The position numbers and the translations under genes were made by a program. A stretch of 64,000 nt of DNA, taken from Phallusia mammillata. Taxonomy: Eukaryota. Position 1 is the first letter of the stretch; every line of letters begins with the position of its first letter. The notes beneath the pieces were generated by a model, which was not told the origin of the DNA, searched no databases, and was given only the letters and a program-made list of their open reading frames with translations. This document shows, piece by piece, positions 23,557 through 43,000 of this stretch. The stretch is from the NCBI GenBank assembly GCA_965637545.1, contig OZ281494.1, positions 11,718,001 to 11,782,000 on the forward strand, written 5' to 3'.

Positions 23557-25091
23557 TCATACGTAATACTCTTTGTCCTTGTCGTGCTTTTGTGATTTGG
23601 CGTCCCTCTTCATTGAACCGTTTTTAATTGGTGTAACCGGTTTGCCTTTCTTCGGCATCGCGCCATATTGTCTTTCTCGCTCGTCAACGTTATACGTCAC
23701 GGAGTCCCGTTTTTTAAACCGGTACATGACGTAAAACAGCAAGAGCACGCAGCAAGCCGCCGCAGCTGCAATTCCCGCTATCATGGCTGTAGTAACGGTC
23801 GTAGCTTGGCCGATGTACACCGAATTCGTGACGTTTGACCCCACATCAACGGTGACGTCAAGCGGCGAAGATGACGTGTTACTGGTGTTGATGATGTTGT
23901 CTCCCATCGGCGAGATCGGAATCTTGATCCTCTTGGTCTTGTCTGGAGTCTGCGCACCGCCGCCGCTCCTCGTCTCTGTGACGTCATTGGTAACAAAAAC
24001 ACTCGGTAAAGGGGCTGACGTGGCACTGCTGTTGCTTTCGTAGGTGACAGAAAAGGCGGCAGGGGGTTGGGTCGACGACCGCCGGGGCGTCATTGGAGGA
24101 TTAGGCGGCGGTGGCGAGGAGGTGACTTTCGCCTGATCAAACCGGATTGAACCGGTTGAAACAGGCACCGAAGTGAGCGTCCTGTCGCTTCCCGCTGAGC
24201 CTGTCCAATCTGCCGCAGCGGTCGTGGGAATGGGGTAGGAGGGTTGTTGGTCTGTGTGTTCACCTGACGTTGCAATGGTGTTGGTAGTGGGTGGGGAAAA
24301 GAGCAAAATACGTGGATTACTTTTATGCGTGGAACTGTTCGGTTTGCTAACCGTGCTAGTGGTGTGTGTGTTGTAGTTTTGTGTTGTTTGAGTTGTGATA
24401 ACTGGTTTGGCATTGGGCTGGACGACCGGAGGATGCAATAAAGCTTCTTGGGTTGACTGAGGACTTGATGTTGGCTGTTCAGGCGTAGAGGATACAGATA
24501 CTGTGTTAGAAACCGAAGGCGTCGTGCTTGGTGGTTGTAATGTCGTTGGAAGTTTACTTGTTGAACCAATATGGACTTCTTGCGACGGAACAGGGTCTTG
24601 TGAAACTTCCTTTCGCGTAAAAAGATTAAGGATATCGCTGAGGCTTGCTTGAGAGGGAGGTGATTCAGATTCGGATTCGACATCAGTTTCGTCAAGATTC
24701 GATTCCTCGTAGGATTCAGGGCTGGTAAAAATGTCGACTATTTCATCAAAACCTTCCATTTGAACTTCCTCGACCTCTACATCTTCATCTGCGTCCTCAT
24801 ACACGCCCTCTTCCTCCTCATAATATTTTACGTCATCATGGGTGACGTCATCGACTTGGTCCTCGTCACCGTCCAGTGAATTGGTGGACGGAGTTTCATT
24901 TGTAAAGAAGCCGGATTCAATAAAGAATCGTTGAAGATCAGGTGCCAGCCCGTTGCCACCAGTTATGCCGTACTGCGCATGCGTGGTTGCCGGTGACGTA
25001 GCAGTGGTTGTTGTAGTTTTAGTGGTAGTTGATGTGATGACGTCATGTTGCTTTGCGAGGTTTGTGTCAATAAAAATCCCGGAGCCAGAAC
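23557..25091 (-). CDS. NRXN: Neurexin terminal exon (transmembrane isoform): SG repeats, acidic and Ser/Thr/Pro-rich stalk, TM, cytoplasmic tail
   Basis: Acceptor TTTTCAG|GT at 25092/25091 is in frame with ORF 23557..24804. TM segment MIAGIAAAAACCVLLLFYVMY; tail RFKKRDSVTYNVDE...KEYYV*. Confidence 0.93.
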
Positions 25092-40000: not shown

Positions 40001-43000
40001 ACGCCACAAGGTACCCAATTCAACCGCACAAACCGTGCTCATCAACCCGCTTTGAAGATACAACAAACGCTCAGTAGCGATTTGCATTTATTCATGCGAG
40101 AGACAGAATCGCCCCCGATTACCCCTTGAAATCAATAGGGGTCGTTCACCCATTCAGCTACGGCCCTCAATTTGTCGAAAATTTTGGCAGCGGCGGTTCG
40201 ATTCACCAACAGACCACGTGACATTCGATTCGTTACGCTTCACTGCAAATTGTGTACGCACAAATGCGTCTGCAACTATAAGGAATAAGCAGCGTATTGA
40301 ACAGATGATTTAATCCCATTGGAAGATATGTTGGTATTAGTAAGGCTTTTATGTTCACTGATTTGCGCAATTTAAACGTATTGATTTGGCTGTCAGTATA
40401 AATATCAGTTTCTCACTAATGGAAGATGATAGTGCTGTCGTCATGTCAAAAATGTGTAAGCTTTGGGGGAAGAATTAGGCGCTGTGAATTAATTACAATG
40501 AAAAGCAAAGATTCGCTGAATAAATTCGTTGAAAAATGGATTCTTACATTCCCAAGGAAACAAACAATTTGGGATTTTAAACCTTATTGTTTTCGAAAGT
40601 TTTCTATCAATAAAACAAAAAGGCCACCCTTATACCTTTTTGACAATACACTAAACTTTAAATTTAAGAATTAACGTAAAAAGTTGGAATCAACCACATC
40701 TAAAAAGCAATGGAAAATCACACTTACTTCCTTTGTGCCTTCCGTCAACTCCAAAAGTGATCCTGTGTCCTCTCCTGGTCAGTTTCACACTGTGCCACTT
40801 CCGGTCATTCAACATAGTTTCACTGTACATGGTATCCGGTCCACTACCTGTTTTGCACGCACAAAAAACGTCACACTGGTTCACTTCCAGCCCAAAGCCA
40901 TTTACGTGCTATCGATATGTGCGTAATCATCAATTAGAACCATGATACAAGCTTGTTACGGGTTATTAATTTTCAATGAAACATAGAGCAAGTCAAAAAA
41001 AATTTTTTTTTAAGTTGTTCATAAAATGTTGTGTTGTAGTCTATGCGTTCCTTTACAGTTAGTCGGTCACTATATAAATGATTTTACTTATGCGTGTTCG
41101 TGTGCTTGTGACTTTATGTTCTTTTTTAAACCATGGATAAGCATGTAATTATGCAACTGCGCATTCTATGATACTACTGCAGTTGTTAACACGATTACAA
41201 CATGCCGAGCGCGGAGGTTCCTCTGTATATGTAACTAATTCTTAACTTATGTAAGTACATGGTTAACACTTAAAATATGCAAAAGGTGATGACCAAAAAA
41301 CTCGAATTTGGGTTAAGGGTGAACCCATTTCATAAACTTGATGGAAAAGGTTATGTTTTCAAAGAATGGTTAAAACATAAGGAATCCTTTTTGATCTTCG
41401 GAGCGTGGTAGCCATCCATACTCTACTTACCGTCTTGCTAACGTGCAACCAGGTTAAAACAGTACATTTCTAATCATGGCCATTCAATGGGGCCGGTGCC
41501 TGCGTCGCGGCCAAGTTTGTCACGTGACCAAAGGGACAACACAACAATGGTAATGACGTGAAACACAAAACACAGTAAGTGGTGACGATGATGTGCAAAG
41601 GCGACTTACGAGGTGCGGTGCAGTTGGGTTGAGAACAGTCTGCGCAACAAAAAGATAACCAAGTCAAAATTGCCGAACCAGCAAGTGTCGCTGATCAACC
41701 CTTAAAAATTTTCATACGACCGTCATTTAAACGACGAATTTTGACAGAGAAGTTTAGGAAAGATCTAGAGAGTTAGAAAATTGACTGCTAAAAACACATT
41801 GCAGGTGTTAATTTATAGTTGCTGGTCTGCCTTGAGCTTCTATTGTTCAGGTAAAAGCGTATGGAATTTAAGCATAAATGTTACTGAAATGAAGGTTTTG
41901 AAAAAAAAAATCTTTCTGACGTACACATAACTTGGCATACTTTCCACTAACGGTAAATTCAACACTCATATACAAAAACAAATATAATCAATTGACATTT
42001 TCTTCACGTAAAAAATAACAATTAGTGATACGGGATGGCTAACTCGGTGCTGTAAAATAGTACAAAGCCGAATAGAGTGGTTTTGATTGACATGTGGCCT
42101 ACCGAGATCGATGGTGAGTTTTAGCCTTCCTCCTTCCATTTCTATTCTCATCATATCTCTAGTGCTCCTGGATACAGTGGCAAACAAAACACCTGCAAGA
42201 AAGAAACGGTGATGACCTGATGTAATCCCAGCCCTACTTCCAATGCCTTTCTCATTAGATGCTTTTCAAAAGTCCAGTAAAATTTTAAAACAAAGAAATT
42301 TGTTTGATGGAAGTAGAAAAACAACTTAAGTAAACGTTGAAAGGGTTTGTCAAAAAAATAATGTGCTTGGTGGGCGGAAATGCAGATGAATGCTTGTTAT
42401 GAATCACTGCGACCGGTAGGAAGAACCGGTCGGGCATCTTGTGCAAAACTTATGACTCACGCCTATGCTTCATTCAACACTTGCGATATTCTAAAGATAG
42501 CAAAACTGAGTTACATAACCTTTGCAAAATGGTTACGGCACAAGCTTTGCGAAATCAATCACAAATTGGTTACAAAAGCATGCAAACATTGTTGAACCTT
42601 CCCGAAAAGGCATTCACAGGCATCTTGCTGATGCGAAACTCATTTTAAAAACTTTTTATTTTCACCAAATGGTAATTGTTGGCCTAACAAAACAATCATC
42701 GAAATCGTATTGGGTCCAAAACAGCCATATCTTTTTACTTTTGGGCATCTAACAAACGGATCAAGAGGCATCGGGACCTATTAACTGTACACTACAAATA
42801 ATAATGATTGACCTGCGGCTTACCTGACTTAAGAGGAGTTTTAAATCTCATCGAAATATCTTCTCCGTCAGTTTGTATGCTTTTCTCCATCTCAAAACCC
42901 ATGTACTGCGTTCCGTCAAAGGTTGCTGACATCACAGCTGTCAATCAAACGAGAAATTTGATTTTTCAGCGAAATAATTTATCGATTGCGAAGGTGCAAA

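What the first reader, a model, noticed from the sequence alone, without database searches (positions are those of the whole stretch)
41610..41639. SS3 microexon with conserved two-cysteine spacing
Seen: 30 nt, phase 1-1, near-ideal splice sites, after ...KLTIDL in LNS4, encoding DCSQPNCTAP. Known (recalled): vertebrate SS3 is 30 nt and reads D-CIRINCNSSK. The D-C-x3-N-C pattern, length, phase and position all match. Inference: an ancient chordate microexon encoding a disulfide loop.
Basis: partly seen in the sequence, partly recalled or inferred. Interest (0 to 1): 0.72.

Follow-up and report, generated by a model that had tools for sequence, protein, structure and literature searches.

The report
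Sea-squirt neurexin SS3 microexon
This 30-letter mini-exon in the sea squirt Phallusia mammillata is the counterpart of the optional "SS3" piece of the vertebrate synapse protein neurexin, so this splice module predates the split between sea squirts and vertebrates.

Summary
On the minus strand, 41639..41610 is a 30-nt, phase 1-1 exon with a pyrimidine tract plus CAG acceptor and a GTAAGT donor. It lies between two LNS4-coding exons of the single alpha-neurexin gene of Phallusia mammillata.

- **Real exon:** The public protein CAB3264446.1 contains exactly the predicted splice product, ..KLTIDL-DCSQPNCTAPR-SGPDTMY...
- **Conserved in ascidians:** Ciona intestinalis has DCSMKNCTAPR and Styela clava has DCVKKNCTAPR, each as a 30-nt exon ending CTC|gtaagt.
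- **Alternative use elsewhere:** RefSeq isoforms in Ciona and Styela replace exactly these 11 residues with Gly, which is the skipped form.
- **Homology to SS3:** The insert aligns residue by residue with the SS3 insert of solved Nrxn1-alpha chains 3R05 and 3POY, and falls as a gap against the SS3-minus chains 3QCW and 2R16.
- **Chance:** The in-phase motif appears in about 6 of 10,000 shuffled introns.

The disulfide is supported only by cysteine parity. Skipping in Phallusia itself was not shown.

This is a new member of a known kind. The isoforms are annotated in databases, but I found no paper describing SS3 in tunicates. Other agents of this scan have already examined other splice sites of this same gene.

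The parts
41610..41639 (-). SS3-homologous cassette microexon, 30 nt, phase 1-1. It encodes (D)CSQPNCTAP(R).
   Evidence: Sequence read. The exact splice product is present in public protein P0001. It aligns to the SS3 insert of 3R05 and 3POY. It is conserved in Ciona and Styela.
41640..41660 (-). 3' splice site of the microexon: pyrimidine tract ttatctttttgttgcgcag.
41604..41609 (-). 5' splice site GTAAGT. The exon end plus donor, CACCTC|GTAAGT, is identical in Phallusia, Ciona and Styela.
41540..41603 (-). First ~65 nt of the downstream intron, with patches conserved among the three ascidians. This may be a splicing-regulatory region, but that is inference.
   Evidence: Alignment A1 and motif scan.
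42103..42192 (-). Upstream LNS4 exon, 90 nt, phase 1-1, encoding ..VLFATVSRSTRDMMRIEMEGGRLKLTIDL plus G.
   Evidence: It aligns to Nrxn1-alpha 696-724 of 3QCW and 3R05.
40728..40847 (-). Downstream LNS4 exon, 120 nt, phase 1-1, encoding SGPDTMYSETMLNDRKWH...
   Evidence: It aligns from residue 727 of 3QCW, 736 of 3R05 and 511 of 3POY. It is single-copy in the genome.

Best explanation
The feature is a genuine coding microexon of the single alpha-neurexin gene of Phallusia mammillata and is orthologous to the vertebrate SS3 cassette (exon 12 of NRXN1, exon 11 of NRXN2 and NRXN3).

Including it replaces one Gly, in the turn between two neighbouring beta-strands of the fourth LNS (laminin-G) domain, with 11 residues: D-C-x3-N-C-T-A-P-R.

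Inferred steps:
- The two cysteines close a small C-x4-C disulfide ring.
- The N-C-T sequon carries a glycan.
- The result is a rigid, glycosylated knob on the LNS4 surface that changes which partners can dock there.
- The exon is mostly included and sometimes skipped, as in vertebrates.

Shown here: the exon, its splice product, its position and phase, its conservation in three ascidians, and its alignment to the vertebrate insert. Shown only in Ciona and Styela, through annotated isoforms: the skipped form. Inferred: the disulfide, glycosylation, effect on ligands, and skipping in Phallusia.
For: The exon anatomy is given.

Organism and splice product:
- Public protein P0001 (CAB3264446.1, 'neurexin-3-like [Phallusia mammillata]') matches the window's exons at 100% identity where the alignments lie wholly inside an exon, including the whole last exon.
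- It contains KLTIDL-DCSQPNCTAPR-SGPDTMY.

Homology to SS3:
- The flanking exons map to LNS4 of Nrxn1-alpha.
- The LNS4 region of P0001 scores 133 bits against the SS3-plus chains 3R05 and 3POY, with the insert aligned (dcsqpnctaprsgp over dcirincnss-kgp).
- It scores 108 bits against the SS3-minus chain 3QCW, where the insert falls as a gap.

Conservation and skipping in other ascidians:
- Ciona has a 30-nt exon ACTGTTCAATGAAAAACTGCACAGCACCTC|gtaagt.
- Styela has ATTGCGTCAAGAAAAACTGCACAGCACCTC|gtaagt.
- Styela isoforms X1 and X4 differ only by DCVKKNCTAPR versus G.
- Ciona isoform X8 carries G in place of DCSMKNCTAPR.

Other support:
- The insert adds exactly two Cys, at alignment columns 69 and 74, in tunicates and vertebrates. 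The rest of LNS4 keeps its own pair at columns 177 and 185.
- The AlphaFold model places the insert as a loop (residues 65-75) between strands 57-64 and 76-82.
- The motif arises by chance in 5.5e-4 of shuffles.
- SS3 is mostly spliced in in human brain cell types (PMC12642523).
Against: - No RNA read or skipped transcript from Phallusia itself was found. The only Phallusia protein on record is the included form, and a search for fragments was blank.
- P0001 matches this assembly at 100% identity where alignments lie wholly inside an exon, so it may be a gene model rather than an independent cDNA.
- RefSeq isoforms of Ciona and Styela are computed models. They imply junction support but do not measure usage.
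- The exon is 30 nt, not the 27 nt implied for vertebrates.
- The glycosylation sequon sits at a different position: N-C-T in tunicates versus N-[SLN]-S after the second Cys in vertebrates.
- The disulfide was not checked in coordinates, and the two structure papers are not held in the library.
Confidence: 0.87

Rival explanations
1. The exon is real and homologous to SS3, but in Phallusia it is constitutive. It would always be included and would give no isoform switch in this species.
For: Only the included form is on record for Phallusia. The splice sites are strong. In Ciona and Styela nearly all listed isoforms include it. Phallusia lacks the UGCAUG found about 45 nt downstream in Ciona and Styela.
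Against: Skipped isoforms are annotated both in Ciona, a phlebobranch like Phallusia, and in the distant stolidobranch Styela. Skipping is therefore probably ancestral to ascidians. Skipping keeps the reading frame and recreates the Gly seen in all SS3-minus forms.
Confidence: 0.2
2. Tunicates and vertebrates independently acquired a two-cysteine insert at the same loop. The resemblance would be convergent rather than homologous.
For: This loop accepts lineage-specific inserts in insects: a K/E-rich insert in beetles and a 9-residue insert in one butterfly isoform. Exon length differs between tunicates (30 nt) and vertebrates (27 nt). Only D, two C, usually N, and a basic residue are shared.
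Against: Both lineages use the same intron position, the same phase and the same split Gly/Asp codon. Both have the same C-x4-C spacing starting at the second residue and a basic residue at position 11. The motif is expected by chance in about 6e-4 of introns. Hagfish also has the insert (P0031).
Confidence: 0.03
3. The feature is a chance open frame with splice-like sites that was picked up by a gene predictor. It would not be a real exon.
For: P0001 may be a computed model.
Against: The same 30-nt exon, with an identical 3' half and donor, exists in Ciona and Styela, whose introns are otherwise unalignable. Shuffle statistics also argue against chance.
Confidence: 0.01

Closest known systems
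Vertebrate neurexin splice site 3 (SS3): exon 12 of NRXN1, exon 11 of NRXN2 and NRXN3
   Same: It lies in the same LNS4 loop, at the same intron position and phase, with the same Gly-to-Asp codon switch. It shares D-C-x3-x-C with identical cysteine spacing, a basic residue before the GP that starts the next strand, and an N-glycosylation sequon inside the insert. It is an in-frame cassette that appears mostly included.
   Different: It is 30 nt (net +10 residues) against the 27 nt (net +9) implied for vertebrates. The second half reads NCTAPR rather than NCNSS, DCNLS or KCNNS. The sequon is shifted by two residues. It sits in a single gene rather than three paralogues. Its regulation and ligands are unknown.
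RefSeq isoform sets of Ciona intestinalis (XP_026689388-399) and Styela clava (XP_077966148-155) neurexin
   Same: They carry the orthologous 30-nt exon, DC(x3)NCTAPR. Both the included and the skipped form are annotated.
   Different: For Phallusia only one protein, the included form, is on record. The three interior residues differ: SQP in Phallusia, SMK in Ciona, VKK in Styela.
Neurexin SS4/AS4 exon in Ciona (Uvarov et al. 2014, PMC3933685)
   Same: It is another vertebrate neurexin cassette exon traced back to tunicates.
   Different: It is a different exon, 90 nt in LNS6. That paper does not treat SS3. It found no skipping of AS4 in Ciona ESTs.
Agrin Z microexons in Ciona (PMC12445529)
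   Same: It is a precedent for a synaptic laminin-G-domain microexon shared by tunicates and vertebrates, with a possible amphioxus counterpart.
   Different: It is a different gene. Nova dependence was shown experimentally there, and nothing comparable has been shown here.

Membership tests
Neurexin SS3 cassette exon | Lies in LNS4 of an alpha-neurexin, between the strand ending ..KLT(V/I)(N/D)(L/I) and the strand starting GP(E/D)T | tested here: met
Neurexin SS3 cassette exon | Phase 1-1 cassette whose inclusion turns the split Gly codon into Asp | tested here: met
   Window DNA. Gly/Asp pairs are seen in Ciona, Styela, fish and PDB chains.
Neurexin SS3 cassette exon | Insert begins D-C and has a second Cys five residues later | tested here: met
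   Alignment columns 69 and 74 of A2 in all plus forms.
Neurexin SS3 cassette exon | Exon length as in vertebrates (net +9 residues, 27 nt) | tested here: not met
   The tunicate exon is 30 nt. The vertebrate plus/minus difference is 9 residues. There is a one-codon difference and the phase is kept.
Neurexin SS3 cassette exon | Alternatively included and skipped | tested here: inconclusive
   Skipped isoform models exist in Ciona (P0160) and Styela (P0171, which differs from P0179 only here). There are no RNA data for Phallusia.
Neurexin SS3 cassette exon | The two insert cysteines form a disulfide | not testable with these tools
   Only parity supports this: the insert adds exactly two Cys to a domain with one conserved pair. 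Model coordinates are not returned, and the structure papers are not held.
Alpha-neurexin | LNS/EGF repeats, a transmembrane segment and a C-terminal ..EYYV PDZ-binding motif | tested here: met
   P0001 carries Pfam Laminin_G_1/2, EGF and PF01034. LNS4 and EGF2 were confirmed. The C-terminus ..KDKEYYV is encoded at 23560.

The most novel reading that the evidence does not exclude
SS3 may not be a vertebrate elaboration. It may be an ancestral chordate switch: a disulfide-closed, glycosylated mini-loop on LNS4 that was already alternatively spliced in the last common ancestor of tunicates and vertebrates. It may go back to the chordate ancestor, because an in-phase E-C-I-R-I candidate sits in the same amphioxus intron. 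Its ligand, which is unknown even in mammals, would then be equally ancient. That ligand could be sought in a single-gene, about 200-neuron system such as the Ciona or Phallusia larva.
Probability: 0.35. Interest if true: 0.6.

Novelty: new member of a known kind. Interest (0 to 1): 0.45.

Why it matters
A 2025 review still states that extensive neurexin alternative splicing appears exclusive to vertebrates (PMC12665717). The only evolutionary study I found treats SS4 alone (PMC3933685).

Showing that the SS3 cassette exists in three ascidians dates this splice module to before the tunicate-vertebrate split. The shared features are the split codon, the cysteine spacing, and skipped isoforms in two of the three species.

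SS3 is the least understood of the classical neurexin sites. Binding is said to be affected only 'possibly at SS3' (PMC10084454). A single-copy gene in a tractable chordate with a tiny nervous system offers a clean place to test what the loop does.

Tried and rejected
- **Phallusia RNA fragments:** A word search with P0001:745-865 for short Phallusia protein fragments spanning the site gave one candidate and nothing scored. No independent RNA evidence was obtained.
- **LNS4-only word search:** A search limited to LNS4 found only P0001 itself. The whole-length search was needed to reach Ciona and Styela.
- **Structure papers:** The two 2011 structure papers (PMC3134934, PMC3279696) are not held. 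The state of the insert cysteines in 3R05 and 3POY could not be read.
- **Literature on the disulfide or tunicate SS3:** Searches for an SS3 disulfide or for SS3 in tunicates or ascidians found nothing relevant.
- **Penguin Nrxn2 locus (L007):** I fetched it to see the vertebrate exon in DNA. It confirms the phase-1 split Gly codon, but no DC..C exon was found in a draft region with small gaps and a duplicated 2-kb block. This was uninformative. The 27-nt figure therefore rests on protein comparisons only.
- **Hemichordate and unnamed protein loci:** The Ptychodera locus and the locus of unnamed protein P0007 could not be fetched.
- **Codon conservation:** In the microexon, 4 of 6 invariant degenerate codons are identical across the three species, against 4 of 17 in the flanking exons. 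The numbers are too small to count as evidence.
- **Shared regulatory motif:** UGCAUG lies at +42 in Ciona and +47 in Styela but is absent from the first 200 nt in Phallusia. I make no claim about regulation.
- **Joined exons:** They were never joined. The spliced sequence used later is the public protein P0001 that the search returned.
- **Human material:** A human NRXN1 construct sequence printed in a paper was read as text only and was put into no tool.

Full report
**What is in the sequence**

The feature lies on the minus strand. Reading 5'>3', the sequence is ..ttatctttttgttgcgcag|ACTGTTCTCAACCCAACTGCACCGCACCTC|gtaagtcgc.., so the exon is 41639..41610 and is 30 nt long.

The exon before it, 42192..42103 (90 nt), ends ..ATC GAT CTC G|gtaggc. 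The exon after it, 40847..40728 (120 nt), starts ..aaaacag|GT AGT GGA CCG. All three exons begin and end in phase 1.

Inclusion gives ..KLTIDL-D-CSQPNCTAP-R-SGPDTMY... Skipping would give ..KLTIDL-G-SGPDTMY...

**Is it more than chance?**

In the 1255 nt between the two flanking exons there are 43 in-frame AG..GT candidates under lax rules. Only this one combines a pyrimidine tract plus CAG with a GTAAGT donor.

An in-phase D-C-x3-N-C right after an AG appears in 11 of 20,000 dinucleotide-preserving shuffles of that interval.

**Organism and gene**

I searched the exons one at a time by reference and did not join them.

- The upstream exon aligns to Nrxn1-alpha residues 696-724 of 3QCW and 3R05.
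- The downstream exon aligns from residue 727 of 3QCW, 736 of 3R05 and 511 of 3POY. This places both in the fourth LNS domain and shows that the SS3-plus chains carry 9 extra residues there.
- The downstream exon is single-copy in the 240-Mb assembly.
- An exhaustive search with that 39-residue exon returned P0001. This is CAB3264446.1 / A0A6F9DN92, 'neurexin-3-like [Phallusia mammillata]'.
- P0001 maps along the window from about 62.7 kb to 23.6 kb on the minus strand. Identity is 100% where an alignment lies wholly inside an exon, and the protein ends ..KDKEYYV.

The window is therefore the Phallusia alpha-neurexin gene, as earlier notes of this scan also said. P0001 contains exactly the predicted included product.

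**Conservation in other tunicates**

A whole-length word search reached Ciona intestinalis and Styela clava neurexins. All three ascidians carry D-C-x3-N-C-T-A-P-R at the same place:

| Species | Insert |
|---|---|
| Phallusia | DCSQPNCTAPR |
| Ciona | DCSMKNCTAPR |
| Styela | DCVKKNCTAPR |

I fetched the Ciona and Styela loci. In both, the insert is a separate 30-nt exon with the same phase, and its last 19 nt plus donor are almost identical to Phallusia's (AACTGCAC[A/C]GCACCTC|gtaagt).

About 65 nt of the downstream intron also align in patches, although the introns are otherwise unalignable.

A further unnamed, tunicate-like protein, P0007, has DCNQIKNCTAPRQ at this site.

**Evidence for skipping**

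- Styela isoforms X1 (P0179) and X4 (P0171) differ only by DCVKKNCTAPR versus G.
- Ciona isoform X8 (P0160) carries G in place of DCSMKNCTAPR.

These are computed RefSeq models, so they indicate junction support but not usage. For Phallusia only the included form is on record, and a search for short fragments spanning the site was blank. Skipping in Phallusia is therefore an inference.

**Homology to vertebrate SS3**

The LNS4 region of P0001 aligns to the SS3-plus chains 3R05 and 3POY through the insert: dcsqpnctaprsgp over dcirincnss-kgp, 133 bits. It aligns to the SS3-minus chains 3QCW and 2R16 with the insert as a gap (108 bits against 3QCW).

Vertebrate sequences found here:
- Fish neurexin-3a: NL-DCIRINCNSSK-GP
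- Fish and gar proteins (the fish one named neurexin-2): DCIGIDCNLSK and DCIRIDCNLSK
- Hagfish: DCIRIKCNNSK
- Skipped forms: NL-GK-GP

A paper's human NRXN1-alpha construct shows the same DCIRINCNSSK (PMC12707391). I read it as text only and put it into no tool.

Shared between tunicates and vertebrates:
- the intron position and phase
- the Gly/Asp split codon
- the two cysteines at alignment columns 69 and 74
- a basic residue before the G-P that opens the next strand
- an N-x-S/T sequon inside the insert

Not shared:
- Length.
- The Asn between the cysteines, which is D or K in some vertebrates.
- The place of the sequon: N-C-T in tunicates versus N-[S/L/N]-S after the second Cys in vertebrates.

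**How it probably works**

An AlphaFold2 model of P0001:735-933, built on a 12-row alignment, has mean pLDDT 75.6. It puts the insert (residues 65-75) in a loop between strands 57-64 and 76-82, with lower confidence than its neighbours.

The rest of LNS4 has one conserved cysteine pair (columns 177 and 185). The insert adds exactly two more in every plus form and none in the minus forms. In an extracellular domain this parity argues that the two insert cysteines bond to each other. The result would be a small C-x4-C ring carrying a glycan.

I could not check this in coordinates.

In vertebrates the function of SS3 is itself open:
- Binding is said to be influenced 'possibly at SS3' (PMC10084454).
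- Models place the insert near neuroligin splice insert A (PMC3622022).
- SS3 is mostly spliced in, with differences among interneuron classes (PMC12642523).

My reading is that the exon acts as a docking-surface switch on LNS4. The ligand effect is inferred.

**How old is it?**

The hemichordate (Ptychodera), annelid, mollusc and insect neurexins in the hit lists show no D-C..C insert at this site. These are single representatives, so absence is weak evidence.

In Branchiostoma belcheri the homologous intron has the same position and phase (KLTFNP-G|gt .. ag|GC CCT GGT). Inside that intron..gagagtcag|AATGCATTAGGATAGTATTTACAT|gtagat would read E-C-I-R-I-V-F-T-(C) in phase.

A [DE]-C start followed by at least three matches to IRINC occurs in 24 of 30,000 shuffles of that intron. 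However, the splice sites are weak, the second cysteine is displaced, and no protein model uses the candidate. I record it as a lead only.

**Novelty**

The isoforms are in public annotation, so the exon is not unknown to databases. In the library I could search, I found no paper that describes SS3 outside vertebrates.
- The 2014 study of Ciona neurexin covers AS4 only.
- A 2025 review repeats that extensive neurexin splicing appears vertebrate-specific.

Other agents of this scan have already examined SS4 and other sites of this same gene.

I class the finding as a new member of a known kind, of moderate interest.

Noticed in passing
L006 13028-13051 (Branchiostoma belcheri, JALCYT010000006.1): In the amphioxus intron homologous to the SS3 intron (same position and phase), a 24-nt candidate exon would read E-C-I-R-I-V-F-T-(C), which resembles vertebrate D-C-I-R-I. 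Shuffle frequency is 8e-4. The splice sites are weak and no gene model uses it.
   Followed up: partly
L004 about 13419 and L005 about 42294 (first base of the motif, 42 and 47 nt into the intron after the microexon): Ciona and Styela both have a UGCAUG (Rbfox-type) motif at nearly the same distance downstream of the microexon. Phallusia has none within 200 nt, but has nine YCAY between +19 and +131 (window about 41591-41479, minus strand).
   Followed up: partly
P0007 residues about 755-775: An unnamed 1935-residue tunicate-like neurexin carries ..VNVA-DCNQIKNCTAPRQ-RPLRL.. at the SS3 site. The ring is one residue longer (C-x5-C). Its source organism could not be looked up.
   Followed up: partly
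P0105-P0114 (beetles) and P0119 (Aricia agestis isoform X4), LNS4 loop: Insects have their own inserts in the same loop: a K/E-rich stretch in beetles (..RLDVKERKKEDREKDK..) and a 9-residue insert (RLPTLNDDC) in one butterfly isoform. The loop looks like a recurrent site for insertions.
   Followed up: no
P0184 versus P0005 (Ptychodera flava isoforms X8 and X11): The two hemichordate isoforms differ by two 7-residue inserts. AASVEDE starts at residue 245 of P0184. GPSMPTG starts at residue 777, about 40 residues after the SS3 position inside LNS4. Neither isoform has an SS3-type insert.
   Followed up: no
P0161 versus P0160 (Ciona), residues 851-869 and about 1150-1230: Ciona isoforms also vary at the junction after the exon downstream of SS3 (TLPVNPVFGNKEDQHALVG versus R). 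They also vary by an alternative block in LNS6, which fits the mutually exclusive LNS6 exons that another agent reported for this window.
   Followed up: no
L007 17929 and 19967 (penguin Nrxn2 draft contig): The exon starting GPETLFAG occurs twice, about 2 kb apart, with identical upstream sequence. This looks like an assembly duplication. No SS3 exon could be found in that draft region.
   Followed up: partly
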